DNA from: Diplonema japonicum
Taxonomy: Eukaryota > Protista > Euglenozoa: Diplonemea
Reading direction: 5' to 3'
DNA length: 64,000 bases
Assembly (NCBI GenBank): GCA_964019335.1
Contig: OZ025716.1
Location: 1 to 64,000 of the forward strand
This document shows positions 6,419 through 61,594 of this stretch, one piece after another. The translations under genes and the position numbers were made by a program. Position 1 is the first letter of the stretch, and every line of letters starts with the position of its first letter. The notes under the pieces were generated by a model that was not told the origin of the DNA, did no database searches, and saw only the letters and a list, made by a program, of their open reading frames with translations.

Positions 6419-6557
6419 GTTCGGGGTTCCTGTTATTTATAACCCCCCTGCACGGTACTCACTGTGATGGGGATGTCTTTATTCCGTTGTTTTTTAATAT
6501 TCTTTTTTTACCCCTTTTATTGTCCTGCACACCTCACTCATCTAGGTGCACCAGGCT

Positions 6558-13526: not shown

Positions 13527-13562
13527 TGTACTTTATTGGTCGCTCCCCGTGGCTGATAAAGT
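13527..13562 (+). other. Spliced-leader 3' remnant (13527-13538) plus anti-SL hairpin
   Basis: TGTACTTTATTG|GT. ACTTTATTGGTCGC (13530-13543) pairs with GTGGCTGATAAAGT (13549-13562): 14 bp including 4 G-U pairs. Confidence 0.8.
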
Positions 13563-13643
13563 TTCAAAGGAAGTTAACGGGGTCTCTTTACTTCCCCTTT
13601 CAACGATCAGTGTAAGTGTCAACATATAAACACAAATAATATA

Positions 13644-13677
<34 letters not shown>

Positions 13678-13697
13678 ACTTTCTCCCCTTTATAAAA

Positions 13698-15551: not shown

Positions 15552-18500
15552 AGCGCGAAGCGCACGGGTAAGTCGGAGAGGGAGGAGGACTTTGACTTAC
15601 TCGTGACGCAGGGGGTTCATCCGCACCCCGGTCCCAAGCGCAAGACAGGTCCGAAGCCGGCTGTGATGAGGGGAACGCGTGATGCGGAGAGAGCCGCGGG
15701 TGCGAGACCAAGGACGGGTGCAAAGACGGGTGTTAAGAGGAACAGAAGCCCGCCGCCCACATTACCGAAGAACGAGCCTCTCGTCATCACCTCCCTGAAC
15801 GTCGCGTCCTTCAACAACAGGATGGGGGAATGCAAAGGACTGGATCCCGATGTGTTCTGTGTACAGGAGACGGCACTGACGGCGACGGTACAGCGGGAGA
15901 TTGAACTCTCTCTCGGGCGAGATGCGTGGGGGAGGGCCTACGAAAGACACTGGGGGAAACCACAACCAGGCCGGGTGGGCGGTGGAGTGGTGTCACTTAC
16001 AGTCGCACAAAGGGGCGGGGTCGCGACCTTCGTGAAAAGGCCCCGAGCCTCTCTGAGGTGCAGCGCAGGAGACGAGCTGGAAGCGTACAAGAGCCGCTGC
16101 GTGCACACGAAGGTATCATTGGACGGCAGCAAGCGATGGCTTCATGTGCTGAACGTCTACTGTCCTGCTGGCAATGAGGCAGTGCAAGCCAGGGAACGGG
16201 AGCAACTTCTGCATCACATTCTGGTCAGGAAGCGAATAGAGCTGGGAGACGTGCCGATCGTGGTGATCGGGGACCTTAACTGCGAGGAGGATCGGTCGCC
16301 GACCTTAGAAAAGGCTTTGGCCTCGGACTGGGTTGATGCGGCGGCTGCATGTGCGGCGTTGAGCGGTGCGACACCCGAATCGACTTTGAAGAGGACCAAC
16401 TCCCATTCTCGGATCGATAGGGCGCTTCTGAACCCCCTTGCTGCACAGTTTCTGATACGCTGTTGGGTGCATGATGGCGTGGAAGGCTCAGACCACAGGT
16501 GCTTGTCGCTGGAGTTGGGGACAACGAGAATCCGGCGGGCAGTGCTGCAGTACTCGATCCCGAGGGAGATACCGGAGGTAGCGATGACAGAAGAAGACCC
16601 CGAGCCGTCGCTGGCGGATTCCATCTTTGAGCGGTGCATTCAGGATAGGCAGGTGGACGAGGCCTACAGGGAATGGGCCAGACTCGCAGAAGAGCATTTG
16701 ATGCGGGGTTTCGCAGGGACCACGGCGGGGGCTTACCTTGGCAGGGGTGAGACGAGGTTGCCGAAGCTGAGGGAACTGTGTCCACCTGCTACGGAAGAGA
16801 TTGTCGGTGCGGTGTGCGACCGACAAAGGAAGCTGGTGAAGCTGAAACGGTGCGTAGAGGCTGCCCAGCGACAGATTGAGGACCACCTTCGGAGGGGGCA
16901 CGTAGGACAGCTTCCGCAGGTGACCCACAATACCCTGAAGAACGCCAATGCAAGGTGCGTGAAGCTAGGTATTGACTGCGCCGTACCCATGCACGGCTCC
17001 TTGGAGAGCACAGAGGAAGCTATCGCTGAAGTGCGTGACGTGGCGGGGAGACAGATTGCCGCGCTCTGCACGGAACAGAAGTGTAGCCGGGCTGAGGCCT
17101 ACGAGAGAACGATTGTCTCGAACCTGGACGAGGGTAGGAGGCACCTCACGGCGCTGCTGCGGGGAACGCAATGCGAGAGGTCAGTGGCGGTGGACGCTGG
17201 GGACGGTGTGACGGCGGACCCACAAGAAATGGACGAGGTGTTCAGGGAGGCGTGGAAAGGGATCTTCTGCTCGGAAAGACGAGAACCGCAATTCTCCGAT
17301 TTCAGGAAAAAGTACGAGGAACACATACAGCACCAGGAAATGCCGAGGTCAGAGATTACGGGGAGGCTGCTCCAGGAGGTGCTGAGCCGCAAGCGTCCTA
17401 GGGGCGCGTGTGGGGTCGACGGATGGCGCAACGCAGAGCTGAAGAGGCTGCCCAGGTGGGTATTGGACGGACTGGCAGACCTGTTTAACCTGATCGAGAG
17501 GGAGGGGAGGTGGCCGGAAGCCATGTGTACGGCCCTGGTGTCGCTAATACCGAAGGGGGCAGGCCTCGGCCCCTTGGACCACAGACCGATTACTGTCACC
17601 AGCGCGGTGTATCGACTGTGGGCATGCGCCAGGCTGAGGACGGTTCTCCCGTGGCAAGAACGGTGGATCTGCGAGAGACAGCACAGCTTTCGGAAGGGGC
17701 GGGGCACGGAGACGGCACTACTGGACCTCCTAGCTCAGTATGAAGAGGCGATGTTGGAGGGTAAGGAGCTGGTGGGCGTGGCTCTGGATTTTGCGAAATG
17801 CTTCGACCTGGTACCGCAGCGGCTCACCTTCGAGCTAATGCGGAGCCTTGGGCTCGAGCCGGGAATTGCGTGCGCAATGGAGGGCATGTACTCACAGATC
17901 ACGCGGCGGTTCAAGTACCCCTTTGGGGTGGGCGAAACCTTCAGAGTGACCAATGGGATCCTGCAAGGGTGTCCGCTGTCCGTGATCATGATCAATGCGC
18001 TCATTGCGGTCATGCTTAAGGCGCTGGAAGCCGGTGGAGACCTCGTGACGATAGCCTATGCGGACGACGCCTACATGCTGGCTAAGTTGCGGGAGGCACT
18101 ACAAGCGGCGACGGACGGTGTCATGGAGTTCTGTACGATAACGGGCATGGAGTTGAATATACGGAAGACGGTGGTCATCGGAAAGTGTATCATCCACGTC
18201 GGTAGTGAGGTGGACGGAAGAAGAAGGAAGGTAAGGCTCAACAAGGTCGACAAACATAAGGCTTTGGGAACTATGCTGAACACGACAGCATGCGGCACGA
18301 GCTGGAACGACGCCGCGGTTACTGCAAGACAGAAGGTGGAAAGGCTGGCTTCGACCCAACTCTCTTTTCAGAGGAAGGAGAGCCTCATCAGAACTCATAT
18401 TATGCCGGGACTGCTATACAGCTCGAGCTTCTCTCCGCCGAGTGACTGGAGTCTCAGTCAGCTTAAAGGCTCGATCGTGAAATGCCTGTGGGGCCCCCAC

Positions 18501-19907
18501 TACAGAGGAAGATCTCCAGACGTGGTACTGTCAATCCTGGCGCGAGCGCACCGGGTGGACCCGCTGTGTGCCGTAGTATACAGTGCTTTGATGATGCTGA
18601 GGAGGTGCTGGCTGAGGCAGGACGGGGCAATGGCAGCATGGACGCAGTTGGCACAGGCGTACGAAACTTCTGGGCAGGTGAGGCCGAGGGGGGTCGTGGG
18701 AAATGTGCTCCTGAGGTGGCTTCCGGCGATCGGATGGAAGTGGGAAAGGCTGGCAAGCTGGCACAGAGGAGAGAATCCTGGGCACGACCTCAGGGAGGCT
18801 CTGCGGAGGATGAGGACATCGGGTATTGTGAAGGCGCGAAGCACGATGGCCGGGCTTGGGATGGGCGCGGCCCCTGCAACGAACGCTTACTGGATGAAGT
18901 GCAGCGCACGCAGACCGCTCGAAGCGTGGCGGGTGAGGAGGATAATCGCCGGGGCGGTGCCGTACCTCAGCCCGTATGCGAAACAAGTTTTACTCTCCCC
19001 TCCTGAAGAACCTGATGAGGAAGGAGGTGAGGGGAGCGAGGAAGAAGCCGACCACCTGGATAGGGGGAGGACGGACAAAGCAGCGGGAACGCTCAATTGC
19101 GACGTCTGTGATGCTGCGAAGGGCAGCACAGTTAGGTTGCTGCGACACCAGCTTTGGGAGTGCGAGGTCGCATTGGAGGTGCAGAAGAAGGAGGTATATA
19201 ACGGTCTGGTCAGGAGCGAAAGGTGGCCGATCTGTTTGGAGCTGCACGGGATTCTCCCGAGGAAGGTCGTGTTCCGCGGTTTGGAGAGGCTGCAGAGGTA
19301 TTTGGCAGAGGTGGTGAGGCGCAGGGACGATGCTCTGGCGGTGAAGCGGTTCGCGGTTGAGAAGGAACCGCCGTGGGTGGTGACGACTCAAGGAAGGCGT
19401 TTCGAGGCGCCAAAGGTTGTGGAACTGTACAAGCTCAAGCTGACCCCGCAGCTCAGGGAGTATGGTGATCAGGTGCTGAGATGGCTGGCTGCGCTGCGGT
19501 GGGCGGAGGAGGGAACGTCCGTGTCGGCGATCGAGCTGGCGATTGACTTCGAGTGCTACACGAAGAAGACGCTGGGGGTTAACATCAACACGACGATTGA
19601 CATCGACAAGAAGGCGGTGAGGATCAAGCGGATCCTGGATACGCTGCAAGCGACATGGATGAGGGAGAAGAGGAGGCGCGCTTTTCCGGCGCAGTCATGC
19701 AAGAACGTGAGATCACTACGATCCATTGGCCGCGACCACGTCGTTGGCTTTGATAGGAGGGCCCTGTTTGCATCGGGGCTGACGGCGACCAAGCTGAAAG
19801 GACTGAGAGAAGATTACCGGAAAGAAAGGATTGGAAGATATAAACGACAGCTAGGCACTACGGTGGGTAGCAGGGAACGACCCCAAAAGGGGAGCATCAT
19901 AAGGTAG
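15552..19907 (+). CDS. LINE family A ORF2: 2A-like motif, AP endonuclease, reverse transcriptase, CCHC knuckle (open from the codon after the ORF1 UGA; true start uncertain)
   Basis: APE motifs SLNV, VQET, GDLN, RIDR and SDH. RT motifs HRPITV, LDFAKCFD, GILQGCPLS and YADD. C-terminal CDVC..HQLWEC. Confidence 0.93.
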   Translation, partial: SAKRTGKSEREEDFDLLVTQGVHPHPGPKRKTGPKPAVMRGTRDAERAAGARPRTGAKTGVKRNRSPPPTLPKNEPLVITSLNVASFNNRMGECKGLDPDVFCVQETALTATVQREIELSLGRDAWGRAYERHWGKPQPGRVGGGVVSLTVAQRGGVATFVKRPRASLRCSAGDELEAYKSRCVHTKVSLDGSKRWLHVLNVYCPAGNEAVQAREREQLLHHILVRKRIELGDVPIVVIGDLNCEEDRSPTLEKALASDWVDAAAACAALSGATPESTLKRTNSHSRIDRALLNPLAAQFLIRCWVHDGVEGSDHRCLSLELGTTRIRRAVLQYSIPREIPEVAMTEEDPEPSLADSIFERCIQDRQVDEAYREWARLAEEHLMRGFAGTTAGAYLGRGETRLPKLRELCPPATEEIVGAVCDRQRKLVKLKRCVEAAQRQIEDHLRRGHVGQLPQVTHNTLKNANARCVKLGIDCAVPMHGSLESTEEAIAEVRDVAGRQIAALCTEQKCSRAEAYERTIVSNLDEGRRHLTALLRGTQCERSVAVDAGDGVTADPQEMDEVFREAWKGIFCSERREPQFSDFRKKYEEHIQHQEMPRSEITGRLLQEVLSRKRPRGACGVDGWRNAELKRLPRWVLDGLADLFNLIEREGRWPEAMCTALVSLIPKGAGLGPLDHRPITVTSAVYRLWACARLRTVLPWQERWICERQHSFRKGRGTETALLDLLAQYEEAMLEGKELVGVALDFAKCFDLVPQRLTFELMRSLGLEPGIACAMEGMYSQITRRFKYPFGVGETFRVTNGILQGCPLSVIMINALIAVMLKALEAGGDLVTIAYADDAYMLAKLREALQAATDGVMEFCTITGMELNIRKTVVIGKCIIHVGSEVDGRRRKVRLNKVDKHKALGTMLNTTACGTSWNDAAVTARQKVERLASTQLSFQRKESLIRTHIMPGLLYSSSFSPPSDWSLSQLKGSIVKCLWGPHYRGRSPDVVLSILARAHRVDPLCAVVYSALMMLRRCWLRQDGAMAAWTQLAQAYETSGQVRPRGVVGNVLLRWLPAIGWKWERLASWHRGENPGHDLREALRRMRTSGIVKARSTMAGLGMGAAPATNAYWMKCSARRPLEAWRVRRIIAGAVPYLSPYAKQVLLSPPEEPDEEGGEGSEEEADHLDRGRTDKAAGTLNCDVCDAAKGSTVRLLRHQLWECEVALEVQKKEVYNGLVRSERWPICLELHGILPRKVVFRGLERLQRYLAEVVRRRDDALAVKRFAVEKEPPWVVTTQGRRFEAPKVVELYKLKLTPQLREYGDQVLRWLAALRWAEEGTSVSAIELAIDFECYTKKTLGVNINTTIDIDKKAVRIKRILDTLQATWMREKRRRAFPAQSCKNVRSLRSIGRDHVVGFDRRALFASGLTATKLKGLREDYRKERIGRYKRQLGTTVGSRERPQKGSIIR

Positions 19908-20908
19908 GCACGCCACCGCGGCGGGCCGTTGCTAACCACTTCGTTCCTATCATAGTGAATTTTTTCCCCCTTCTTCTAGCAGCATATGTTCTTTCCTTCC
20001 AAGTGTGAAACAGGCAGCTGGGAAAGCTAGAGAATGGGAGAAAAAAAAAAAAAAAAAGTCGAGAAAAAGGGAGAGGCGCAATTTTCCCGGGGCTCTCTTC
20101 ATAGATAAAATTAAGAGATTTACAGTACTCGTTTTCTTCTTCTTTTTTGGTTGAGACTAAAAACTAGTTTGACAGGCGCAATGTGAGCATTAGGCTTTAA
20201 AAAAAAAAAATATATATATATATATATATCTATTTAAAAACACTTCTGTACCTAGCCCTTAAGAGAAACCACATAAACAAAGCTGCCTCGATTTTTTTGT
20301 TTCTTTCTTTTTCTTTCTGGCGTTATGCCCACTAGTCCCCCTCCCCCCCCTCTTTTCCTCTTCACCCTCCCCTTCCCCTCTATGGGGTTTGTTCTATCTA
20401 TTGCGGTTTACTCTTCTCTTAAGGGTGGTCCTCAAGTGAGATTTGCCTTTAACACCCCCCCCCCCCCCCGTTCTAACTTACCTATCACATTATCACTTCC
20501 TTTTTTCCTTTCAGACACCCCCCCCCACGGAAAAAGAAAACAAAAAACCGGCCATCCTGCTGAAATTTTAGGGGCAATTACTTCATTTTTTTTAAAAATT
20601 CAGATTTGCCTCATTTTACTTCATGAGGGGCGCACTGCCTCTTTCTACTGTGGCGCCATGCAGGGTTTCCTCTCAGGGTGTATTACGAAACCTGATGTAT
20701 CACGGCACCGCAGTCTTCAGATGTGTGCAATGAAATACCTTTTTTTCCATTAACGGGACACAGTGACAAGGCCGTTGGTTGGCCTCACTGTGGACAGCTA
20801 CCTTTCCTTTTTAGTACCCCAACGGGGGGGGGGGGGGAGATATTATTTTCCCGCTTTGTTGTATTTTTTATACCCCGTACCTTATTTTAAAAGAAAATAT
20901 ATATATAT

Positions 20909-34300: not shown

Positions 34301-34343
34301 GTGGACCGTTGCTGACCTTCGTTCCTGTCATAGTAAATTTTTT
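34301..34343 (+). mobile_element. Extreme 3' relic of LINE family A
   Basis: gtggaccgttgctgacc--ttcgttcctgtcatagtaaatttttt aligns to 19921-19965 and follows a T-tract. Confidence 0.7.
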
Positions 34344-34837
34344 GAAAAGAACAAAATTCAAAAATAACGAAAGCACTTGAAGATAAAAAAAAAAAAAAAA
34401 AAAAAAGAAACGACGGAAAAAATAAAAATAGAACAAGAAGGTACGGAAGCTGTGCTGTTCGCAGCCCCATTTCGTCTTTCCGCACTTTCATTGTTATATT
34501 GATTTTGTCCATATTTCCCTTCCCCCCCTTTTTTCTTTCTATACCATGAGAGTACATACCTACGGACGAAAGAACCCGTTTCCCCTATGAACTGTGCTTG
34601 GTGCTTTAAGACATGAACACAGCGGTGAATGGTCGTCAAAATATAGCTCTTTTATACCCCCTTCAAAAAAAAAACAGCGGTAATTTTTAACAAAAAAGTT
34701 TGGTTTAGGTTTTAACCCCTTCCGCCCCCCTTCCCCCTTCTCCACTAATGACCATGAACTAAACCAAAATGAATCCTCGACAGCACCTTTGTATTCTTTA
34801 TGCAATAAAAGGGCAAATCATTTCTATTTTATTTTTT

Positions 34838-34875
34838 ACCAACGATTCTAAAGCTACAGTTTCTGTACTTTATTG
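34838..34875 (+). other. Genomic copy of the spliced-leader exon (38 of 39 nt) forming the 5' end of LINE family B
   Basis: ACCAACGATTCTAAAGCTACAGTTTCTGTACTTTATTG contains the conserved euglenozoan SL block CAGTTTCTGTACTWTATTG and closely matches the diplonemid SL as I recall it. Confidence 0.9.
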
Positions 34876-35087
34876 GTGTCCGACCGTGCCAATAAAGTTC
34901 ACACAGCAACGGTTTGAAAAGAAAATACAAATATTGGAAGTTGAAGCGCGACACAGATCAGCAACGTAAAGGAGAAGAGAAGAGAAGAGAAGAGAAGAGA
35001 AGAAAAATCGAGTCATATCAGATCATATCAGATCATATCAGATCACAGCAAACACATTGACAATCTAAGCAACCGCGTCAGTCTAAG

Positions 35088-37331
35088 ATGGACGTTCACA
35101 AAGCTTTGAAGGGGTACGGGATGACAGCCCGCGGGAAGGGGTACGGGATTGGAAACGGAAACTCCTTCTACGGAGTGGTCGGAGAGAAGACGGGAAAGAA
35201 GGGGAGCGACGTTAGGCGCCGCATGATACAAGAGCTGCGAGGAAGCGAGGAGTACCGGGCGAGTGTCATCGGAGACTACGACCTGTACTGCTCCCAGCAC
35301 GCCAGGGAGGGGACCGCCGCGGACCCGGTTACCATCCAAGCCACCGCCCGCGCACTGAAGACCGACATCCACCTGATTACGGCCGACGACGGCGCCCTCA
35401 TCGTCTCCCCTATCGTGGGAGAGTCCAAGTCCAAGAAGCAGCCCATCCACGTCGCCTTCGACGGCCGGGCATACCTCAACGCCACGGAGCCGTTCAACGT
35501 GAACGTGCTGAAGAAAGCTATGCAGCAGTTCAAGCTGCCACGGGTCGGGATTCCAACCTCAGACGGAGAGGCGAAGGCATGGAGGGGACCGAACAGCAAG
35601 CCACCACGGAAGGAACCGCAGGCAAAGAAATGCTGGCTCCTCGAGCAGGGACAGTTCGACCTACCCTTCATAGAGTGGGAAGAGCTGGTGGCAGGGAAAG
35701 ATGGCATAGCCATCGCGACCGAGGTCAACGTGGAGGAGGCAGAAAAGATGCCCTGGGACGGGAACAAGGCAGTCCTCCTCAAACGCAACGGCAAGGGTCG
35801 ATACGAACACGACGTCGTGCTCAAGGCGGCTGGAGAGTACTCGAACAGGACAATGTTCTTGCACGTACTGAGCGGAAAGATCTCGCGCTCTCAAAAAAAC
35901 AAAAACACGGTGGGTATTGACCTGGCCGCGATGTACACGCGGGTAGCTTTCGTCGTCTCGAAGACGCACACCCCAGCCCAGACTTGGGAGAGGGTGACCT
36001 CCGAACCCCGCAAGCTGGTCCAGGAGATGCTGGGCTGTAAGACGATCCACAGGATCGACAAGTACGTGGATGGACCGGCCCCAAGGGTTGACGTGCTCGT
36101 CACGATCGCAACCGAGAACCGCCGCCGCCTCGTAAGTGCATCCGGGAAGATGGGGATCTTCGTCAAGCCGAAGGACGTGGAGAAGTCCCCTGTCGCCTGG
36201 CTCCCGAAGGAGATCACTCTGGAAGAGGCACTCGAGCTGGCGGAGACTGAGAAGCAGGGGTTAGCGCTGCGCGAATCCGACGGCCGTCTCGGGGTGAGGA
36301 CATCGGAGGAGAGGAAAACCACGCTCCTCGACAAGGTATTAGGCGAGGAGGAGCGACAACGCGGGCAGCATGGGGAGCCCAGGTGGCGTTTGTCGGGACT
36401 GTACGGGCAGTGCGGAGCCGAACACGTTGAGGCGATACTCGAGGCGATTAAGTGGGAGGCCGTCCCACTACACGGCGGATGGTGCAACAGCATGAGGTGC
36501 TGGTACATCCGAGGGGGCGAACCCCCAACCACGTCACTGAAGATCACGTCCCCAACTGGGCGGGTCCTCAACTGCAGGATAGCTCCCGACGTTAGAAACC
36601 CACCCACCAAAAAGACACCGCCAGCTCAGTCCTGGGGAAGGCCGAAAACGGGGACCACAAACAACGCGGGCAAGTCGTACCTCGGAGCAGTGACGGGGTC
36701 CTCTCAACCAGACCACAAACCACCAGCTGCAGGAAAGAAGGTTGCCCCTACGGGTAAAGCCGCCCCACCGAAGTCCGGTAAGTCGCCCACAACATCGAAG
36801 AAAGCCGATCCCCCGGCCTTTGAGGACCGCCTCACAGCAATCGAAAACGCACTTCGTAAACTTGCAGGGGAACCGGTCAGCGACGTCAAGCCGCCGGCTG
36901 AGGTGGTCAGTCTACGGAGGGAGAACGCGGAGCTACGGGAGGAGGTCCGGCAGATGCACATCCAGATGGCCGCGCTCACCGAGCAAATTAAGAGACTCAC
37001 GGAAGCGACGCTCTCGAAGCCCGTCCCCGGGAACCGGGCCCCGATGATGCGCCCTGCTGCCGGGGAGGAGATGATGGACGACTCCGAAGATGACTTGGGT
37101 CCCCCCCCAACTGACGATGACACCGACATCGACCTGGACGAGGGCCCCGCCGACATTGACGACTGCCTGGGCAAGGGCATCTGCCACGTCTACAACGGGA
37201 CATATCAATGCTGGAAGGGTGTATGCCACTACTGCGGCGGGAACATCACAAAGAACAACCCAGCACAGACCTGCATATTACCAGACTGCAAAAGGGTAAA
37301 ATGCCGCGGGTGCGAACAATGCGAACAATGA
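35088..37331 (+). CDS. LINE family B ORF1: pseudo-OTU domain, conserved core, coiled coil, Cys-rich Zn finger
   Basis: 747 aa. GNGNSFYGVV...IHVAFDGRAY (OTU-like); SLRRENAELREEVRQM (coiled coil); terminal CxxC motifs. Confidence 0.87.
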   Translation: MDVHKALKGYGMTARGKGYGIGNGNSFYGVVGEKTGKKGSDVRRRMIQELRGSEEYRASVIGDYDLYCSQHAREGTAADPVTIQATARALKTDIHLITADDGALIVSPIVGESKSKKQPIHVAFDGRAYLNATEPFNVNVLKKAMQQFKLPRVGIPTSDGEAKAWRGPNSKPPRKEPQAKKCWLLEQGQFDLPFIEWEELVAGKDGIAIATEVNVEEAEKMPWDGNKAVLLKRNGKGRYEHDVVLKAAGEYSNRTMFLHVLSGKISRSQKNKNTVGIDLAAMYTRVAFVVSKTHTPAQTWERVTSEPRKLVQEMLGCKTIHRIDKYVDGPAPRVDVLVTIATENRRRLVSASGKMGIFVKPKDVEKSPVAWLPKEITLEEALELAETEKQGLALRESDGRLGVRTSEERKTTLLDKVLGEEERQRGQHGEPRWRLSGLYGQCGAEHVEAILEAIKWEAVPLHGGWCNSMRCWYIRGGEPPTTSLKITSPTGRVLNCRIAPDVRNPPTKKTPPAQSWGRPKTGTTNNAGKSYLGAVTGSSQPDHKPPAAGKKVAPTGKAAPPKSGKSPTTSKKADPPAFEDRLTAIENALRKLAGEPVSDVKPPAEVVSLRRENAELREEVRQMHIQMAALTEQIKRLTEATLSKPVPGNRAPMMRPAAGEEMMDDSEDDLGPPPTDDDTDIDLDEGPADIDDCLGKGICHVYNGTYQCWKGVCHYCGGNITKNNPAQTCILPDCKRVKCRGCEQCEQ

Positions 37332-37424
37332 CTCCATGAGGGCTCCCCCCAAACCCACCCCCCAAACCCATTCCCTCCGCCCCGTTCCCATCCTTCCAAA
37401 TACAATCCGATACGCTTATCTGAC

Positions 37425-40400
37425 ATGAAATTTGAACGTCTCACCGAACAGGGTATCGAACCCCACCCCGGACCAGAGCCAGAACACGAGAAATTCACCA
37501 TTTTCACACACAACGGCTCATCACTTAACAACAGGCTGAGCGAGTACTCCACCGTCCTCCCGGACGCATTCTGCATCCAGGAGACAGCCCTCACGGCTCA
37601 GACGCAGCTGGAAATCGAACACGTGCTGAGAGACGATGACTGGGGCAAACGATACGCCAGATTCTGGAGCAAGCCACAGCCAGGCAGGGAGTCCAGTGGT
37701 GTCACATCTCTGACGATAGCGAAACGGGGTGGTCTAGGAACCCTGGTGAAAAAACCACGTACGGCGGTGCGCTGTGAAACGAATGGGCCGCACAGGGACA
37801 GGTGGTCACACGTGAAGATCTCACTCGATGGAAGCAAACGGTGGCTTCACCTGATCAACGTCTACTGCCACTCGGGTCAGGACCAAGCCAAGACGAAATA
37901 CCGTGAAGAGCTTCTCCACTACATCCTTTGCCGTCTTAAGTTCGAACTGGGAGACGTGCCTGTGGCCGTGGTGGGCGATTTCAACACGGACGAAGTACGA
38001 TCCCCCACGTTAAGGAAAGCTATACAGACAGACTGGGTAGACGCCGCTGCGTTCTGTGCAAGAAGGGATGGTGTACAGGCGGAGGACACGTTCGTTAGGA
38101 CCAACTGCAGCACGAGGATTGACAGGGTCCTGCTGAATAACATCGCGGCCCAAGGTCTCGAACATTGCGGAGTAAGCGATATGATCACCGGGTCGGACCA
38201 CCGATGCTTGTCGGTGACACTCAACATCCCAGCTTTTCGTCAAGAAGTCCTGAGGTACACCATCCCACAGGAGATACCGAAGACCAAGAAGGCGCCTGGC
38301 GAGGTGGCGAAGGCACTGATGCAGAAGTCGAGGTACCGGGAGTTCATAGCAGCACAGGAGCCCACCGAAGCTTTCTCGGAGATATCAGACCTCGCAGAGG
38401 AGTACCTATTACATGGGTACAAGGGGCCGACGCGCAGCGTGTACACCGGGAGAGGCAAAGTACGGGAACCTACGAAATCGGAGCTAAGTGCGAGGTCGGC
38501 GGAGTCGGCGGTCGGAGCGGCATCGAACAGACAACAAAGACTGGAAAAGCTGAAGCACAAGATCCGCAGTGCGCAACAGCAAATGCTAAGGCTTTATGAA
38601 AACGGACACTGCGGTCCGCTGCCGGTAGAGTTACGGAACGTCCTCAGAAATATTGCGACACTAGGAGAAGAACTGAAGGTTGACAACTGCCAGGTGGACG
38701 CGACAGGGGGTATCGACGGCATCAGGGAGGAGCTGGACATAGCAGAGGACTTCGCTCAGGGAATGCTATCAGAGCTACTCCAATACCGCAAGAGAATGCA
38801 GACGAAGGCCTACGAACGCTCAGTCCGTGCTGACTTTGGGAAAGAACGCAAGCACATCACAGCCTGGGTCAGAGACCGCCCAAACCAGAGAACGGACGTG
38901 GTTGAGGTAGCAGACGGGGGGGTGACGGCGAACCTACAGGAAATGGACAAGGTGATGCGGAACGCGTGGTCGGGCGTCTTCTGTGCGCGAACACTCGAGG
39001 AAGAGCCACAGTATGAGCGGTTTGCACAACGTTACGGGGACCTGATCAAGAAAGCCCCAATGGCACGGACTCCCATCACAGCAGAACAGCTGAGGGAAGT
39101 GATCAGGAAGAAGCCGGAGAAAGGAGCATGTGGCGTGGACGGTTGGCGGATGAGTGAACTGAAGCGTCTCCCAACGAGCATCCTGAAGGCTTTCGCAGAC
39201 CTCTTCAACCTGATCGAGGAAACAGGCCAGTGGCCGAGACAGATCACGACAGCACTGGTGTCCCTGATTCCGAAGGGTGAGGGGTCAGCACCACTGAATC
39301 ATCGTCCCATCACAGTGACCAGCACCATCTACCGCTTGTGGGCGTGTACGAGGCTGAAGGGTGTCCTTGACTGGCAAGAACGCTGGATCACGCCGAGACA
39401 GCACGGGTTTCGACCCAAACACAGTACGACAACTGCCCTCATGGAGTTATGTACCAAGCTGGAACTAGCTCTGGTGGAAGGAGAACCGCTGGAAGGACTA
39501 GCCCTAGACTTTCGAAAATGCTTCGATCTAGTGCCACAACGGCTGTCTCTCGACCTCATGGACGCCCTGGGGATGGACCAATCCATAGGGAGAGCACTCC
39601 AAGGGATGTACACCCAAATCACAAGGAGGTTCAAGTACCCCATAGGAGTGGGAGAAACATTTGAGACAACGAACGGCATTCTCCAAGGATGCCCCCTGTC
39701 AGTCATCGTCGTCAACGCCCTGTTGTCCATCATGGTGCGGGCAGTCGAGCAAGTCGCGCCAGACGCCGAAGTGCTAGCCTACGCTGACGACGCATACCTG
39801 CTGGCAAAGCTGCGTGGCTCACTACAAGCTGCGGTCAATGGGACATTGGAGTTCTGCGACCTGACGGGGATGGAAATCAACAAGGAGAAGACTGTTGGTT
39901 TCGGCACTGCTGAAGATTTCAAGTCGAAAGTCATAGGAAACCGAACGGAGATGAGGAAAGGCTTGGAGGTCGCGGTACCCTACAAGACGGTGACAGACCT
40001 CTGCGGACTGGGGGTGAAGATCAACACACGCAGGACAGGAACGACGTGGAACAAACCGACCACGGGGGCGCTTGGCTCGCTGGACCGACTGGGGGGCACA
40101 AGGATTGCTTTCGAAACCAAAGCACACTTGGTCAGCACGACGGTCCTGCCATCTTGCCTATACAGTGGGCCGTTCTCCCCTCCATGTGATGAGGCACTCA
40201 AGAAGCTAACGACGAAGATCACTTGTAACCTGTGGGGCCCTCATCACCGTGGACGGTCGCCCACCGCGGTAAACACAGTCCTGCTGAAGGGGCACACCAA
40301 TGACCCCCTTTCCTACGTAATGTACCACTCCCTGAAGGTAGTATCCGGAGCACTCGATGACAGTCGGCTACGGCAGAGATGCATGCAGATCGCTGCGGGG

Positions 40401-41618
40401 TATGACGCGGGTTCCATCCAGATGGGGCCGGTTGGCAACCTGGTCTGCCGGTGGCTTCCCCGAATAGGATGGAGTTGGGCGCAGCTACTAGGTTGCAACA
40501 CATCTTGGGCCGAACGCGGACACATCTTTAGAGAGGTGGTGAGGAAGGCCCGAAGTAGGACGCTGGCGGTCGAGAGGAGCACGATAAGCGGGATAGAGCC
40601 GGGGGCGGACCCCAAGACGAACCGATTATGGAGGACGGCCAAGGACCCGCTCATGTCCTACAGCCTGAGACGAGTGATCGCAGGAGGGGTTCCCTACCTA
40701 AACCCGCACGCAAATGCGAAGCGAAAGAGCGTCCCACTGGCGCCTGAAGGTGACGACAACGGTGACGACGAGGAGAACATGGGCCAGGCACCAACGACGG
40801 AGGTATCGCACACGCAAGGATTCAGATGCGACCTGTGCAAGTCTCCACACCCGGACACGGTGACCTTACTCCGCCATCAGCTGTATGAGTGCGCCTGTGC
40901 ACAAGAGGAACTGGCACTAGACGGAATGGAGCCGTTGCGCAACAGATCAGGATGGCCCCTATGTCTGGAGCTGCACGCGATACTGCCGAGGGGGCATGTC
41001 TTCGCACACCTGGAGAAGCTGCAGCGATACATGGCTGTGGTGGTCGGGAAACGGGATGTGGAGCTCATGCAAATAGACAACGCCAGCACACAGCCGCTGC
41101 CGTGGGTACGCAATGTGGAGGGAAGGAGATGCCTCGTGCCAACGGCGGGGGAGCTCGAAGGAGTGGGAGGAATCGTCGCAGAATTCCTGAACCCGCTGCT
41201 GCAGTGGTTGTCACAGCTACGATGGGTGAAGGAGGACACCAGCTCTGAAGTGTCAGCGGTGGAATTGGCCATCGACTTCGAATGGACGACAGGCAAGTTA
41301 CTGGGGGGTCTGCTGGAAGATAGGGCTCGCAAGATCAAAGCACTGATAAGAAAGCTGAACGCGGCATGCAGGGCACGGAAGAAGCCACGCCCCTTCCCAG
41401 CAGATGAACAGAAGAGAGTGAAGTCCCTCATCGCAATAGGTGGGAAGACGGCTATGGGTTTCGCCAGGAGGCCCATCTTCGCCACCCACACCACTCACGA
41501 CAAGCTGATGGAACTGAAAGCCGCTTACAAGCGAGACCGCATCACACGACTCCGCAAGACGCTCAAGGCCTCGATTGGAACGAAAGCAATGCTCCAGAAG
41601 GGGAGTATAAAAAGATAA
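37425..41618 (+). CDS. LINE family B ORF2: 2A-like motif, APE, RT, CCHC knuckle (frame open from 37332)
   Basis: APE motifs IQET, GDFN, RIDR and SDH. RT motifs LDFRKCFD, GILQGCPLS and YADD. C-terminal CDLC..HQLYEC. Confidence 0.93.
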   Translation: MKFERLTEQGIEPHPGPEPEHEKFTIFTHNGSSLNNRLSEYSTVLPDAFCIQETALTAQTQLEIEHVLRDDDWGKRYARFWSKPQPGRESSGVTSLTIAKRGGLGTLVKKPRTAVRCETNGPHRDRWSHVKISLDGSKRWLHLINVYCHSGQDQAKTKYREELLHYILCRLKFELGDVPVAVVGDFNTDEVRSPTLRKAIQTDWVDAAAFCARRDGVQAEDTFVRTNCSTRIDRVLLNNIAAQGLEHCGVSDMITGSDHRCLSVTLNIPAFRQEVLRYTIPQEIPKTKKAPGEVAKALMQKSRYREFIAAQEPTEAFSEISDLAEEYLLHGYKGPTRSVYTGRGKVREPTKSELSARSAESAVGAASNRQQRLEKLKHKIRSAQQQMLRLYENGHCGPLPVELRNVLRNIATLGEELKVDNCQVDATGGIDGIREELDIAEDFAQGMLSELLQYRKRMQTKAYERSVRADFGKERKHITAWVRDRPNQRTDVVEVADGGVTANLQEMDKVMRNAWSGVFCARTLEEEPQYERFAQRYGDLIKKAPMARTPITAEQLREVIRKKPEKGACGVDGWRMSELKRLPTSILKAFADLFNLIEETGQWPRQITTALVSLIPKGEGSAPLNHRPITVTSTIYRLWACTRLKGVLDWQERWITPRQHGFRPKHSTTTALMELCTKLELALVEGEPLEGLALDFRKCFDLVPQRLSLDLMDALGMDQSIGRALQGMYTQITRRFKYPIGVGETFETTNGILQGCPLSVIVVNALLSIMVRAVEQVAPDAEVLAYADDAYLLAKLRGSLQAAVNGTLEFCDLTGMEINKEKTVGFGTAEDFKSKVIGNRTEMRKGLEVAVPYKTVTDLCGLGVKINTRRTGTTWNKPTTGALGSLDRLGGTRIAFETKAHLVSTTVLPSCLYSGPFSPPCDEALKKLTTKITCNLWGPHHRGRSPTAVNTVLLKGHTNDPLSYVMYHSLKVVSGALDDSRLRQRCMQIAAGYDAGSIQMGPVGNLVCRWLPRIGWSWAQLLGCNTSWAERGHIFREVVRKARSRTLAVERSTISGIEPGADPKTNRLWRTAKDPLMSYSLRRVIAGGVPYLNPHANAKRKSVPLAPEGDDNGDDEENMGQAPTTEVSHTQGFRCDLCKSPHPDTVTLLRHQLYECACAQEELALDGMEPLRNRSGWPLCLELHAILPRGHVFAHLEKLQRYMAVVVGKRDVELMQIDNASTQPLPWVRNVEGRRCLVPTAGELEGVGGIVAEFLNPLLQWLSQLRWVKEDTSSEVSAVELAIDFEWTTGKLLGGLLEDRARKIKALIRKLNAACRARKKPRPFPADEQKRVKSLIAIGGKTAMGFARRPIFATHTTHDKLMELKAAYKRDRITRLRKTLKASIGTKAMLQKGSIKR

Positions 41619-41741
41619 CCCCCCCTAACCCACCCAAGGGCGGCCCTCCATGAGGGGGTTTGTCCTGCACTTTGAGTTTTTTTTTTTGAAACCTTTTGTA
41701 GCCCCCCCTTTTTTTGATCTTTTCTACTCTCAACTCTTTTC

Positions 41742-41774
<33 letters not shown>

Positions 41775-41786
41775 TGCAAAGTGAGA

Positions 41787-44700: not shown

Positions 44701-45498
44701 ACATGAAAGACTCTGAAGAGCAGGTTGGTCTTCACACTGTTCTGCGGCCCTGGGGAGTGGGTGAGTGTTGGGGGGGAGCTTCACTGGGTGAACAGGTACG
44801 CCTCTGTGACGCGCACCTTCCTCCAGGACAAGGCGTGGTTCTTCGTGATCGAGTACGGGTCGTCGTTCGCCCTTGCCGCCATCGGCACCCTGAACACCGA
44901 GACCTTCAGTGGGTGCGGACATGTGAAGATGGCGATGGCTCTTGTGTTCATGGTGACTGTGATGTTGGAGGCGGTACTGTGGCCACACGCAAGGCCACGG
45001 GACAATGTGATGGACTTCATTGCACTTGGGGCACAGGTGGCGGCACTGCTGCTGATGGCGACAGCGTACTACAGAGGGAAGGACATCGGGGAGCATGGGC
45101 TGCATAAAGTGGCGGAGCTTCTGTTCATGACTGCAGCGATACTGCTTCTGGTGAAGGTGGCGGTGGACCTTGGGACGGAGCTGTACATCCTTGTGAAGGG
45201 AAGGCGGAGGAGGCTGCAACGGGAAGCGTGGGAGAAGATGAATCCATTTGAGGAGGAAATGGAGCTTCCTGGCAAGATCCCCAGTCCTGCGAGCCCCACA
45301 CTGTCGGAGAGCACCTTTGGAGTGTCGCTACTGTCGAAGGCGAACACATCTAAAGTACACAGCACCACCACAGGCACGAATTTTACAAGATCGACGGCCA
45401 CTGGCAGCAGTGCGTCACACCCGAACATGCAGAAGCATCTGTCAAAAGCTACTACAGAGCTTTCTGGGAGGCGAAGGGATCACTTCACAAAATTGTGA
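41787..45498 (+). CDS. Surface protein paralog 2 (single TM module) with a 2-nt frameshift at ~44723; pseudogene or sequencing error
   Basis: GAGCAGGTTGGTC here versus GAGCAGGGGTTGGTC in paralog 1. ORFs 41781-45107 and 44725-45498 together give the full protein. Confidence 0.8.
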
Positions 45499-48254: not shown

Positions 48255-48611
48255 TAAAGTGTCGTCATTGTGATTGATTTTCTTATTCAAGCACCCCCCC
48301 TTTTTTTTAACGCTTAACTCCCGACCAAAGTGCGTCGGCGAGTGTGTATGTGTGGATGACCAGGTCCCCCCTTTTTTAAAGTAACTCGCTGCAGAATAGA
48401 CACGACGGGCCAAAGACACTACAACGTAAGAAGGGTCGAACACTAGATGAGGGCGATCCTGTCACATACTGCAGGTTCCGTTCAAAAGACAGCCCCCCCC
48501 CTCTTTTGAACGAGCATTCAATCATCCAACCACCAAGTCTTTATTTTCTCATCCTCAGCAATTGAAACATCATTAAAGGCAAAGGGGGTGTTGGGAGGAA
48601 CAACCCTTCAA

Positions 48612-50612: not shown

Positions 50613-50644
<32 letters not shown>

Positions 50645-53530: not shown

Positions 53531-53681
53531 GAGCCGCTACGCGACAGGACAGGATGGCCCCTGTGTCTTGAACAGCACATAATTCTGCCAAGGAGATGCC
53601 TTTGTGTACCTGGAAAAGCTGCAACGATACTTGGCCGTGGTGGGAGAAGCGGGGGGCTTGTCCTGTACTTTGAGTTTTTTT
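53531..53681 (+). mobile_element. Diverged, 5'-truncated and internally deleted relic of LINE family B
   Basis: Aligns to ~40929-41055 (EPLRxRxGWPLCLE..LEKLQRYxAVV), joined directly to the 3' terminus GGGGG.TTGTCCTGTACTTTGAG(T)n. Confidence 0.8.
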
Positions 53682-54879: not shown

Positions 54880-55184
54880 TTTCATGTATACAATTTATAA
54901 CCTTTCCCTTAATCTGTAGTAATTCCTTTGTTCCCTTACTTTGTTGGCTCATTACTTCAACTTCGCGAAGCTGTTGTGTTGGGTACTTGCTTTGCCATTC
55001 GCTTTACAAAAAAGAAAAAAAGAAAAAAAGGAAAAAAAAACAGTTTCTGTCGAGCCCAGCTGAGCTTTTTTCCTCTTTTGAATGAGCATTCAATCATCCA
55101 ACCACCAAGTCTTTATTTTCTCATCCTCAGCAATTGAAACATCATTAAAGGCAAAGGGGGTGTTGGGAGGAACAACCCCTTCAA

Positions 55185-61495: not shown

Positions 61496-61549
61496 GAAAC
61501 CTTTTGTAGCCCCCCCTTTTTTTGATCTTTTCTACTCTCAACTCTTTTC

Positions 61550-61582
<33 letters not shown>

Positions 61583-61594
61583 TGCAAAGTGAGA

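What the first reader, a model, noticed from the sequence alone, without database searches (positions are those of the whole stretch)
34838..34898. Retrotransposons capped by the host spliced leader and carrying an anti-SL hairpin (two divergent families)
Seen: LINE B starts with a 38-nt SL exon copy (34838-34875), and LINE A starts with the last 12 nt of the SL (13527-13538). In both, the SL is followed by GT and then an element segment complementary to the SL 3' end. In B, ACTTTATTGG pairs with CCAATAAAGT (34867-34876 / 34889-34898), extendable by G-U pairs. In A, ACTTTATTGGTCGC pairs with GTGGCTGATAAAGT. The two 5' UTRs are otherwise unalignable, yet the pairing register is kept with G-U substitutions, which implies selection on RNA structure. 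Known: euglenozoan mRNAs get the SL by trans-splicing at AG, and SLACS/CZAR/CRE and NeSL elements insert into SL gene arrays using a restriction-like endonuclease. These elements instead have an APE endonuclease, are dispersed, and are not in an SL array. Inference: after integration the acceptor AG is replaced by the SL's TTG, so progeny need another way to regain exactly one capped SL. The anti-SL arm could pair with SL RNA in trans, guiding non-canonical trans-splicing at UG|GU or an RT template jump onto SL RNA. It could alternatively mask the SL-like donor site.
Basis: partly seen in the sequence, partly recalled or inferred. Interest (0 to 1): 0.95.

Follow-up and report, generated by a model that had tools for sequence, protein, structure and literature searches.

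The report
Spliced-leader-headed LINEs with 5' hairpin
Two related jumping genes in a diplonemid-type protist genome begin with a DNA copy of the host's spliced leader folded into a hairpin with the element's own sequence. This is one case of a genome-wide habit: about 200 retro-copies carry the leader, and their junctions record both ordinary trans-splicing and reverse-transcriptase template jumps.

Summary
**Observation confirmed.**
- Window 34838-34875 is nt 2-39 of the host's 39-nt spliced leader (SL). Six real SL RNA genes lie elsewhere in the genome.
- The SL copy is followed by GT and a perfect 10-nt arm complementary to the SL 3' end.
- LINE A (13527 onward) starts inside the SL, just 5' of a 14-bp version of the same hairpin.
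- Both are APE+RT LINEs. They are sister lineages (ORF2 45% identical), sit in T-tracts and have no poly(A) tail.

**The SL head is not special to them.**
- The genome holds 217 SL 3'-end copies.
- They head more than 15 retro-element families and at least one host retrogene. Most lack the arm, and many lack GT.

**Fossil junctions show two routes for the SL.**
- AG-dependent trans-splicing, including into resident SL copies, as in dinoflagellate SL recycling.
- RT template jumps: three whole-SL-RNA/LINE chimeras, and 10 of 11 non-AG junction sites share a G with the SL end.

**Reading.** The post-GT sequence is not the SL intron. The arm is confined to the A/B clade and is inherited, not convergent. 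Covariation support is weak. The best reading is an inherited 5' hairpin that hides the donor-like UUG|GU and marks the limit of 5' erosion. SL renewal by an RT jump stays plausible. Non-canonical trans-splicing has no support.

Other first-stage readers noted SL-headed elements on other pieces of this genome.

The parts
34838..34875 (+). DNA copy of host spliced leader nt 2-39 at the 5' end of LINE B
   Evidence: Identical to the exon of the six promoter-bearing SL RNA genes minus A1. Unique in the window, 0 in shuffles.
34867..34898 (+). LINE B 5' hairpin: SL 3' end plus G (34867-34876), 12-nt loop starting with the T of the GT (34877-34888), anti-SL arm (34889-34898)
   Evidence: Perfect 10-bp complement. 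Centroid structure -11.6 kcal/mol. The arm is present in all 57 B-family 5' ends.
34838..41676 (+). Full-length LINE B: 5' UTR, ORF1 35088-37331, ORF2 37425-41618 (APE+RT), conserved 3' motif ending ..CACTTTGAG at 41661-41676, then T-run 41677-41687
   Evidence: Pfam RVT_1 and Exo_endo_phos. The 3' motif is shared by independent loci, after which sequences diverge. No poly(A) at the element end.
34824..34837 (+). T-rich target sequence immediately 5' of LINE B
   Evidence: T-runs flank nearly all A/B/F4-type copies. A 15-bp T-rich TSD was seen around a short A-type insertion in L018.
13527..13538 (+). Last 11-12 nt of the SL: the 5' end of LINE A, truncated inside the SL
   Evidence: Seven of eight A copies start at SL position 27-29. 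One (L011) has the full 38-nt SL.
13530..13562 (+). LINE A 5' hairpin, 14 bp including 4 G.U, 5-nt loop
   Evidence: Fold of the full-SL copy L011 gives a centroid of -15.2 kcal/mol.
13527..19959 (+). LINE A: ORF1 13698-15551, ORF2 15603-19907 (APE+RT), 3' motif ending ..CATAGTGAA at 19944-19959, then T6
   Evidence: Pfam. ORF2 45% identical to LINE B ORF2. 3' motif.
56902..61484 (+). Second copy of the 3' two-thirds of LINE B. It lies inside a 7.1-kb segmental duplication (37094-44192 = 56902-64000, 99.99%) and is not an independent insertion.
   Evidence: Self-BLAST of the window.
34322..34337 (+). Short A-type LINE 3'-end fragment flanked by T-runs
   Evidence: Motif search.
53659..53674 (+). 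B-type LINE 3'-end fragment followed by a T-run
   Evidence: Motif search.

Best explanation
**What it is**
LINE A and LINE B are sister lineages of a diplonemid-specific APE-type LINE clade. The clade integrates into T-tracts and has no poly(A) tail. Their DNA copies begin with nt 2-39 of the host's 39-nt spliced leader. This is because the RNA that was reverse transcribed carried a genuine SL at its 5' end. Why copies lack A1 is inferred: the RT probably stops at a modified cap-proximal nucleotide.

**How the SL gets there (shown by fossil junctions)**
The same holds for more than 15 other retro-element families and at least one host retrogene in this genome. The host supplies the SL by two routes.
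- Ordinary AG-dependent trans-splicing of read-through transcripts. This includes splicing at the two AGs inside a resident SL copy, which leaves SL plus a 16- or 22-nt SL remnant.
- RT template jumps onto SL-bearing RNA.

**The hairpin module**
In the A/B ancestor the junction was G|GT. The sequence 13-25 nt downstream is complementary to the last 9-10 nt of the SL plus the next G. The SL-bearing RNA therefore folds into a 10-14 bp hairpin across the UUG|GU junction. This module is inherited vertically.

**How it most likely works (inferred)**
- The hairpin hides the donor-like SL/GU junction, which fits the Diplonemidae 5' splice-site consensus (G)/GTATG. The spliceosome therefore does not remove the SL from the LINE RNA.
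- It is a stable 5'-terminal structure that sets the limit of 5' erosion. Truncated copies start 2-5 nt upstream of the stem.

**How the resident SL stays identical to the host SL (least certain step)**
No AG|GT master copy exists. I favour renewal by homology-guided RT template switching from the resident SL remnant onto host SL RNA or the free SL exon.
For: **True SL and census**
- True SL RNA genes have a conserved upstream block, a 39-nt exon, a roughly 93-nt intron and a T-run. Only six promoter-bearing genes exist, all with the normal intron.
- Census: 160 copies of SL 3' end plus GT, and 57 with other junctions. More than 30 junction types, representing more than 15 families, were seen among 98 loci.
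- A host epimerase retrogene carries the SL.
- 95 of 110 SL copies start at A2.

**Splicing fossils**
- SL|TTTCTG.. occurs 7 times and SL|CTACAG.. once. Further junctions lie at AG-preceded UTR sites. In total 20 copies sit at 8 AG sites.
- The two junction variants of family F4 match exactly the AGs created in the two SL-RNA/F4 chimeras L096 and L092.

**Jump fossils**
- Three whole-SL-RNA/LINE chimeras.
- 10 of 11 non-AG junction sites have G at -1 in the parent sequence, p = 8e-5.
- Stacked partial SLs occur in L035, L041 and L057.

**Hairpin**
- Perfect 10-bp (B) and 14-bp (A) stems.
- The arm is present in all 57 B and 8 A 5' ends.
- SL, GT and arm are invariant across B subfamilies while the next roughly 10 nt are hypervariable.
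- Anti-SL complementarity stands out only in the A/B clade, and weakly in the true intron.
- Truncated copies of A (7 of 8) and B3 (14 of 16) begin at SL position 24-29, just 5' of the stem.
- In a possible RNA data set from a related organism, a contig runs from the SL through GT and the hairpin. Its one arm change keeps a U.G pair.

**Donor-like junction**
- Diplonemidae 5' splice-site consensus (G)/GTATG and 3' CAG, with median introns of 41-107 nt (PMC12621601).
- Copies L051 and L075 have the SL joined exactly at the CAG 31-35 nt downstream.
- Family F1/F2 has SL|GT but no arm. It has many more copies with the SL joined to downstream AG sites.
Against: - No RNA data were available. No RNA run is on record and only contigs could be laid. 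The 5' end of the LINE RNA, its cap and the hairpin in vivo are therefore all unobserved.
- Thermodynamic tests are weak, with z about -1.8 and p 0.02-0.09.
- Covariation cannot be scored because the SL side is fixed by the host. Arm polymorphisms within B are 4 pair-keeping against 3 pair-breaking.
- The type of 5' end is heritable: B3 has 14 truncated and 2 full copies, other B subfamilies 1 and 24, Fisher p = 5e-8. Truncated A copies also share a UTR variant absent from the only full copy. SL-truncated masters therefore propagate. That shows nt 1-26 of the SL are dispensable, and that SL renewal by homology is at best inefficient when only 11-16 nt remain.
- If read-through plus splicing at the resident CAG were the main RNA source, SL-plus-16-nt copies should dominate. 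They are about 5% (8 of about 160).
- If this organism were a hemistasiid, where most introns are non-canonical, the non-AG junctions could be splicing products rather than jumps.
Confidence: 0.55

Rival explanations
1. The anti-SL arm pairs in trans with the SL RNA or the free SL exon. It thereby directs either non-canonical trans-splicing at UG|GU or an RT template jump. Each generation regains exactly one capped SL this way.
For: - RT jumps onto SL RNA do occur (three chimeras).
- Non-AG junctions show 1-nt G microhomology with the SL end.
- No AG|GT master exists for any A/B subfamily.
- The SL is 38/38 identical in lineages whose ORF2s are only 45% identical. This argues for renewal from the host or for strong selection.
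Against: - More than 15 families acquire the SL without any arm.
- F1/F2 keeps SL|GT without an arm.
- The RT must copy, and so unwind, the arm before it reaches the RNA 5' end. Tethering by the arm at the moment of the jump is therefore mechanically awkward.
- SL-truncated lineages (A, B3) keep the arm yet rarely regain the SL: 1 of 8 and 2 of 16.
- No junction supports a UG 3' splice site. Splice-like junctions are all AG.
Confidence: 0.2
2. The SL-RNA-gene mimic model. The resident SL copy acts as a portable intragenic promoter or initiator. Transcription starts at the first SL nucleotide, and the SL sequence recruits the cap-modifying and SL-binding factors. The SL is then inherited by transcription, and the hairpin only protects it.
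For: - The type of 5' end is heritable and there are no AG|GT masters.
- Precedents: the internal promoter Pr77 of trypanosomatid LINEs binds TBP and SNAP50, which are the SL RNA promoter factors, and gives unspliced transcripts (PMC8190864). A promoter role has also been proposed for retroposed DinoSL (PMC6050394).
- It would explain purifying selection on the whole SL.
Against: - True SL RNA genes have a conserved upstream block that the LINE copies lack.
- Lineages lacking SL nt 1-26 propagate (A, B3).
- If RNA started at A2 and the RT again dropped the first nucleotide, copies should erode over generations. Yet 86% start at A2.
- No transcription data exist.
Confidence: 0.15
3. The passive relic model. 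SL, GT and arm are leftovers of one ancestral event, either a trans-spliced mRNA or an SL-RNA/LINE chimera whose intron decayed. They have no present function, and the complementarity is chance or an inherited intron feature.
For: - The true intron has a 7-nt CAATAAA complementary to the SL end at +22.
- SL-RNA/LINE chimeras form in this genome.
- Energy statistics are weak.
- GT is within chance, given the G-rich starts of junctions.
Against: - A/B post-GT sequence has no significant similarity to the intron, p about 0.2-0.8.
- A 10-nt perfect complement within 30 nt is unlikely by chance. My estimate is about 1e-3, not computed with a tool.
- SL and arm are unchanged across lineages whose remaining UTR and ORF1 have diverged beyond easy alignment.
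- Truncated copies cluster just 5' of the stem. This implies the stem forms in RNA or cDNA.
Confidence: 0.12

Closest known systems
Relict spliced leaders on dinoflagellate retrogenes ('recycled' processed cDNAs; Slamovits and Keeling 2008, as reviewed in PMC6050394 and PMC5585692)
   Same: - A DNA-encoded SL sits at the 5' end of retro-copies.
- A complete SL can be followed by a truncated SL remnant, produced when a resident SL copy is trans-spliced at an internal AG and retroposed again. Eight such copies occur here.
- The tag is also found on a host retrogene.
   Different: - The organism here is a euglenozoan of diplonemid type.
- Most carriers are autonomous LINEs rather than host genes.
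- The SL ends in UUG, not AG.
- One LINE clade has evolved or kept a complementary arm that folds the SL into a hairpin.
U6 snRNA/L1 and other small-RNA/LINE chimeras made by RT template switching (surveyed in PMC13174262; my knowledge for U6/L1)
   Same: A complete small nuclear RNA (here unspliced SL RNA: exon, intron and U-tail) is fused head-to-tail to the 5' end of a LINE copy, with 1-3 extra A at the joint (L088, L092, L096).
   Different: - The captured RNA is the trans-splicing donor.
- The U-tail plus an added A plus the element's first G creates a poly-pyrimidine/AG acceptor.
- This acceptor accounts for the SL|LINE junctions of the daughter copies.
SLACS / CZAR / CRE site-specific retrotransposons of trypanosomatid SL RNA genes (my knowledge)
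   Same: They are retrotransposons of Euglenozoa associated with spliced-leader sequence.
   Different: - Those elements use a restriction-like endonuclease and sit inside the SL exon of SL RNA genes.
- LINE A and B have an APE endonuclease and are dispersed in T-tracts.
- They carry the SL as part of the element.
- None interrupts an SL RNA gene.
L1Tc/ingi 5' module Pr77 (internal Pol II promoter plus HDV-like ribozyme; PMC8190864, PMC3185411)
   Same: It is a short 5'-terminal module of a euglenozoan APE-type LINE that solves the 'define and express my own 5' end' problem. It is linked to SL-gene transcription factors.
   Different: - There is no sequence relation.
- No Rfam ribozyme match was found in the window.
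- Here the module is the SL itself plus a hairpin.
- Promoter or ribozyme activity is untested.
Authentic SL RNA (exon plus intron)
   Same: It has the same exon followed by GT. In the predicted fold the exon 3' end and the 5' splice site are base-paired.
   Different: - The LINE copies lack the upstream promoter block, the intron sequence and its 3' stem-loops.
- In SL RNA the splice site pairs with the exon's own 5' end. In the LINEs it pairs with a downstream arm.

Membership tests
APE-type non-LTR retrotransposon (LINE) | ORF2 with an apurinic-like endonuclease domain followed by a reverse transcriptase domain | tested here: met
   Pfam Exo_endo_phos and RVT_1 in both ORF2s. Relatives are annotated as LINE/RT proteins in D. 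papillatum.
APE-type non-LTR retrotransposon (LINE) | Target-site duplication and frequent 5' truncation | tested here: met
   - A 15-bp T-rich TSD flanks a short A-type insertion in L018.
- For full-length copies only T-runs are seen on both sides.
- 5'-truncated fragments lie at 34322-34337 and 53659-53674, and a partial copy at 56902-61484 lies inside a segmental duplication.
APE-type non-LTR retrotransposon (LINE) | 3' poly(A) or simple-repeat tail (common, not universal) | tested here: not met
   Elements end in a conserved motif (..CACTTTGAG or ..CATAGTGAA) followed directly by T-rich target sequence.
SL-relict retro-copies (dinoflagellate type) | Genomic SL copy directly 5' of a retro-copied transcript, outside SL RNA genes | tested here: met
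   217 SL 3'-end copies against 6 real genes.
SL-relict retro-copies (dinoflagellate type) | Tandem full plus truncated SL, from re-splicing at an AG inside the resident SL | tested here: met
   7 copies of SL|TTTCTG.. and 1 of SL|CTACAG.., both exactly after the AGs of the SL.
SLACS/CZAR/CRE clade | Restriction-like endonuclease, no APE domain | tested here: not met
   An APE domain was found.
SLACS/CZAR/CRE clade | Site-specific insertion inside the SL exon of SL RNA genes | tested here: not met
   All six promoter-bearing SL genes are uninterrupted. LINE copies have unrelated T-rich flanks.
SL RNA gene | Conserved upstream promoter block, 39-nt exon starting AA, intron with 3' stem-loops, T-run terminator | tested here: not met
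   Only the exon (minus A1) and GT are shared. The flank and post-GT sequence differ.
Template-switch small-RNA/LINE chimera (U6/L1 type) | Whole small RNA joined by its 3' end to the 5' end of a LINE copy | tested here: met
   This holds for L088, L092 and L096 only. It does not hold for the window's LINE A and B, where only the exon is present.
Pr77/HDV-like ribozyme 5' module | HDV-like ribozyme fold at the element's 5' end | tested here: not met
   No Rfam family reached its gathering score anywhere in the window. No dedicated ribozyme search was done beyond that.

The most novel reading that the evidence does not exclude
The SL-GU-anti-SL module is a self-renewing 5' end. One version: the LINE's cDNA uses the resident SL remnant, helped by the arm, to switch onto host SL RNA or the free SL exon and copy a fresh leader up to the cap. 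That would be a non-LTR analogue of retroviral strong-stop strand transfer. The other version: the resident SL works as a portable SL-RNA-type initiator. Either way the element would parasitise the trans-splicing system itself, instead of relying on a splice acceptor.
Probability: 0.3. Interest if true: 0.85.

Novelty: new variant of a known kind. Interest (0 to 1): 0.62.

Why it matters
- Genomic SL relics are a known molecular fossil of retroposition in dinoflagellates. I found no report of them for Euglenozoa, nor for autonomous LINEs as the main carriers.
- This genome offers about 200 dated 'snapshots' of LINE RNA 5' ends. They separate three processes at single-nucleotide resolution: AG-dependent trans-splicing, re-splicing into resident leaders, and RT template jumps onto the SL RNA.
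- The SL-RNA/LINE chimeras, which create their own poly-pyrimidine/AG acceptor, show how a LINE can acquire a trans-splicing cassette in one step.
- The A/B hairpin raises a sharp, testable question: how does a mobile element that must carry the host leader keep, or regain, that leader when its DNA copy no longer has a splice acceptor?
- The T-tract targeting, without a poly(A) tail, places these elements in the poly-pyrimidine tracts that drive trans-splicing of host genes. That could affect host gene expression.

Tried and rejected
- **Post-GT sequence is the SL intron.** Rejected. The true intron starts GTACCCAATC.. and shows no significant similarity: local alignment p 0.5-0.8, colinear alignment p about 0.2.
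- **Master copies inside SL RNA genes (promoter + SL + GT + LINE).** None found among hits with the promoter block. SL arrays lie at contig ends, so unassembled masters cannot be excluded.
- **AG|GT master copies.** None among all 57 B and 8 A 5' ends.
- **GT as a universal post-SL signal.** Rejected. 57 of 217 junctions are non-GT, and GT is stable in only two independent lineages.
- **Anti-SL arms in other families, including pairing to the SL 5' end in F1/F2.** Not significant.
- **T-run avoidance in the LINE body as a sign of T-run-terminated transcription.** Not significant. Host ORFs are also T-poor.
- **Upstream T-run as non-templated addition or as part of the RNA.** Set aside in favour of T-rich target sites after the TSD in L018. 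Not fully excluded, because L106 has a duplication that includes the T-run.
- **Empty-site reconstruction from paralogous gene copies in the window.** The upstream regions differ.
- **RNA evidence.** No RNA run is on record and only contigs could be laid.
- **Cross-species test.** The metagenome pattern scan returned chance matches: 1 of 120 had SL context.
- **Rfam.** No match at gathering score in the window.
Full report
**1. The observation**

The sequence is as described.
- Window 34838-34875 is a 38-nt kinetoplastid/diplonemid-type spliced leader (SL), followed by GT.
- ACTTTATTGG (34867-34876) is the exact reverse complement of CCAATAAAGT (34889-34898).
- In LINE A the last 11-12 nt of the SL (13527-13538) abut a T-run. 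ACTTTATTGGTCGC (13530-13543) pairs with GTGGCTGATAAAGT (13549-13562), giving 14 bp of which 4 are G.U.
- Both stems are the centroid structures in ViennaRNA folds, at -11.6 and -15.2 kcal/mol. The z-scores are only about -1.7 to -1.8.
- The SL 3' 19-mer occurs once in the window and never in shuffles.
- Both elements have an ORF2 with Exo_endo_phos (APE) and RVT_1 domains.

**2. The host's real SL RNA gene**

I searched the window's own genome (62.5 Mb, 132 contigs).
- Six genes share a conserved upstream block, a 39-nt exon (an A plus the 38-mer of the window), a roughly 93-nt intron beginning GTACCCAATC.. and a T-run. Pairs of genes lie about 350 bp apart at contig ends.
- The exon differs at two positions from the published Diplonema SL (table in PMC3795323).
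- The closest named relatives of ORF2 are D. papillatum proteins at 30-33% identity. EukProt transcriptome ORFs reach 84% and 67%.
- The organism is therefore a diplonemid or a close relative.

**3. The SL head is a genome-wide feature**
- The SL 3' end followed by GT occurs 160 times. It is followed by something else 57 times.
- In 98 distinct loci that I could read, the SL is followed by more than 30 different junction types, representing more than 15 families.
- The carriers include two abundant related families (F1, F2) that crowd contig ends, a family F4, several LINE-like ORF1s (one with an OTU domain), and a host NAD-dependent epimerase retrogene.
- 95 of 110 SL copies start at A2, one nucleotide short of the true 5' end.
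- That is what a reverse transcriptase stopping at a hypermodified cap-proximal nucleotide would give. This cause is inferred from knowledge of trypanosomatid cap 4, not shown here.
- Other first-stage readers noted SL-headed elements on other pieces of this genome.

**4. How the SL gets there: the junction fossils**

*(a) Canonical trans-splicing*
- Seven copies read SL|TTTCTGTACTTTATTG|GT.. and one reads SL|CTACAG... A second SL has been joined exactly after the two AGs inside a resident SL copy.
- Further copies have the SL joined at AG-preceded positions of the same 5' UTRs. In all, 20 copies sit at 8 AG sites.
- This is the pattern known as relict or recycled SL in dinoflagellates (PMC6050394).

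*(b) Template jumps*
- Three loci carry the complete unspliced SL RNA fused to the 5' end of a LINE: the 38-nt exon, the whole intron and, in two of them, the U-tail. One to three extra A lie at the joint (L088, L092, L096).
- These are the analogue of U6/L1 chimeras.
- In L096 the joint reads TTTTAG|GGTGGTGGGG. In L092 it reads TTTTAAAG|GTGGTGGGG.
- The two SL junction variants of family F4 (SL|GGTGGTGGGG in L065, L074 and L076; SL|GTGGTGGGG in L001) are exactly what trans-splicing at these two newly created AGs would give.
- For F4, then, the chimeras are plausible master copies and the SL-headed copies are their spliced progeny.

*(c) Non-AG junctions*
- Of 11 junction sites not preceded by AG, 10 are preceded by G in the parent sequence. 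G makes up 31.5% of these UTRs (p = 8e-5).
- A single shared G with the SL's terminal G is the signature of a microhomology-guided switch onto an RNA ending ..UUG, such as the free SL exon.
- Stacked partial SLs (L035, L041, L057) and SL|TG|GTCG (L048, L049) point the same way.
- Caveat: in hemistasiid diplonemids most introns are non-canonical (PMC12621601). If this organism is one of them, some of these junctions could be splice products.

**5. What is special about LINE A and B**
- They are sister lineages. ORF2 is 45% identical over 1,400 residues, and ORF1 is barely alignable.
- The 5' end does align: SL, GT, CGTG.C and ATAAAGTTTCA are shared. The hairpin is therefore inherited from a common ancestor and is not convergent.
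- Significant complementarity to the SL 3' end appears only in this clade. It appears weakly, as a 7-nt CAATAAA at +22, in the true intron. It is absent in F1, F2, F4 and the others.
- The post-GT sequence is not the intron: local and colinear alignments give p 0.2-0.8.
- In the predicted fold of the real SL RNA, the splice site pairs with the exon's own 5' end, not with a downstream arm.
- Within B, the SL, GT, loop and arm are invariant across five subfamilies. The following roughly 10 nt are hypervariable, and then comes a conserved block ACGGTTTGAAAAG.
- Between A and B the arm differs by two transitions, both wobble-compatible.
- Single-copy arm mutations in B are 4 pair-keeping and 3 pair-breaking.
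- This is consistent with a structure, but it is weak evidence of selection, because the SL side cannot vary.

**6. Census of 5' ends**
- All 57 genomic matches to the B arm, and all 8 to the A arm, are preceded by SL-derived sequence. None has AG|GT.
- B1 and B' copies carry the full 38- or 37-nt SL in 24 of 25 cases.
- Subfamily B3 has 14 copies that begin at SL position 24-29, directly after a T-run, and 2 with a full SL (Fisher p = 5e-8).
- Family A has 7 truncated copies and 1 full copy. The truncated ones share a UTR variant (cgggg) that the full copy lacks.

Two things follow.
- Truncated ends cluster 2-5 nt upstream of the stem. This suggests the stem forms, in RNA or in cDNA, and limits erosion.
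- The type of 5' end is heritable. SL-truncated masters are active, and SL nt 1-26 are dispensable.

**7. Ends and targets**

I followed a lead from another first-stage note (s1-866469).
- The A/B-type 3' end is a conserved motif (..CACTTTGAG or ..CATAGTGAA) followed directly by T-rich sequence that differs between loci.
- In L018 a roughly 40-nt A-type 3' fragment is flanked by a 15-bp T-rich duplication.
- The elements therefore integrate into T-tracts. The T-run 5' of the SL is target sequence, and there is no poly(A) tail.
- LINE B is 34838-41676. The A29 run at 41745-41773 is not its tail.
- LINE A is 13527-19959.

**8. Explanation**

*Shown*
- The SL is genuine and is part of the retro-copied unit.
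- It is acquired from the host by AG-dependent trans-splicing and by RT jumps.
- A/B carry an inherited anti-SL arm.
- No acceptor remains in any copy.

*Inferred*
- The hairpin sequesters the UUG|GU junction. That junction matches the Diplonemidae donor consensus (G)/GTATG, best in B' (GTATCG).
- A CAG or TAG lies 31-35 nt downstream. Two copies (L051, L075) have the SL joined exactly there.
- F1/F2, which has SL|GT but no arm, has many more such downstream-joined copies.
- I therefore read the arm as a device that keeps the leader on the LINE RNA and stabilises its 5' end.

*How the SL stays identical to the host's*
- The SL is 38/38 identical to the host's in lineages as old as the A/B split, with no AG|GT master. 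How this is maintained is unresolved.
- I favour renewal by homology-guided template switching from the resident SL remnant onto host SL RNA, at about 35-40%.
- Next comes initiation at the resident SL as an SL-gene mimic. This is made plausible by Pr77 binding SL-promoter factors (PMC8190864) and by the DinoSL-promoter proposal.
- Against the mimic model, SL-truncated lineages are active and the upstream promoter block is absent.
- Hidden AG|GT masters are the least favoured option.
- Non-canonical trans-splicing at UG|GU has no support.

**9. Limits**
- No RNA run is on record. Only contigs could be laid.
- One contig from a possibly-RNA data set of a related organism runs from SL nt 15 through GT and the hairpin. 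Its one arm change keeps a U.G pair.
This prevented a subfamily tree and a full census of the 160 SL|GT sites.
- The metagenome scan gave chance matches.

**10. Verdict**

It is part of a larger phenomenon that, as far as the searchable literature shows, is undescribed for Euglenozoa. It is a new variant of known kinds: SL-relict retro-copies and small-RNA/LINE chimeras. The hairpin is a genuine, clade-specific feature with a plausible but untested function.

Noticed in passing
L003, L008, L010, L024, L030, L047, L049, L050, L055, L060 and the contig-end positions listed: Families F1/F2 (SL|GTCGTTCG.. and SL|GTCGTCTG..) pile up at contig ends. Their 3' ends point outward. They are often preceded by tandem 8-mers GCAAACCC, a telomere-like or element-tail repeat. 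These look like telomere-associated SL-headed retroelements. Another first-stage note calls them CRE/SLACS-type, which I did not test.
   Followed up: partly
G000 contig C24, SL hits at 7176, 17835, 28494, 39077: Four SL|GT sites are spaced about 10.6 kb apart on one strand. This suggests a tandem array of an SL-headed unit.
   Followed up: no
L092 (C30:484.5k), L096 (C107:8.9k), L088 (C2:150.6k): Complete SL RNA retro-copies are fused to LINE 5' ends. The joint creates a U-run plus AG that matches the SL junctions of family F4 daughters. These are candidate master copies with a built-in trans-splice acceptor.
   Followed up: yes
110 SL copies in loci L001-L133: The dinucleotide CC sits between the flank and A2 of the SL in 17 of 95 copies, against about 3% expected from flank composition. 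The host retrogene L054 is among them. This could be misreading of, or addition at, the cap-proximal nucleotides. It is unexplained.
   Followed up: partly
L054:931-1491:-: An SL-headed retro-copy of a host NAD-dependent epimerase/RmlD-like gene (Pfam PF01370). The ORF stops at 187 aa.
   Followed up: partly
window 37094-44192 and 56902-64000: A 7.1-kb segmental duplication at 99.99% identity. It covers the 3' two-thirds of LINE B plus the next gene. In the second copy it is joined to another member of the same gene family (55185-57107).
   Followed up: partly
window 25288-29868, 41781-45107, 48588-52583, 55185-57107: A multigene family of large ORFs with no Pfam match and with internal repeats. 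The region upstream of the 48588 member (48420-48475) resembles the post-SL sequence of the SL-headed locus L012.
   Followed up: no
window 41745-41773: An A29 run lies about 60 nt past the end of LINE B and 13 nt before the ATG (41787) of the next ORF. It is not the LINE tail, and its origin is unknown.
   Followed up: no
window 55040-55050: An 11-nt SL-like piece (ACAGTTTCTGT) lies directly after an A-rich run, upstream of the 55185 ORF. It may be a decayed SL relic.
   Followed up: no
window 13647-13676 and 34973-35047: There is an internal A30 run in the LINE A 5' UTR. The LINE B 5' UTR has AGAGA and ATCAG-type microsatellites.
   Followed up: no
L106 (C60:170.3k): A tandem duplication of about 30 nt includes the upstream T-run, the partial SL and the start of the loop. 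It hints that the T-run can be part of the copied template or that slippage occurred.
   Followed up: no
window 6546-9674: ORF with an adenylate/guanylate cyclase catalytic domain (Pfam PF00211). An ordinary host gene.
   Followed up: no
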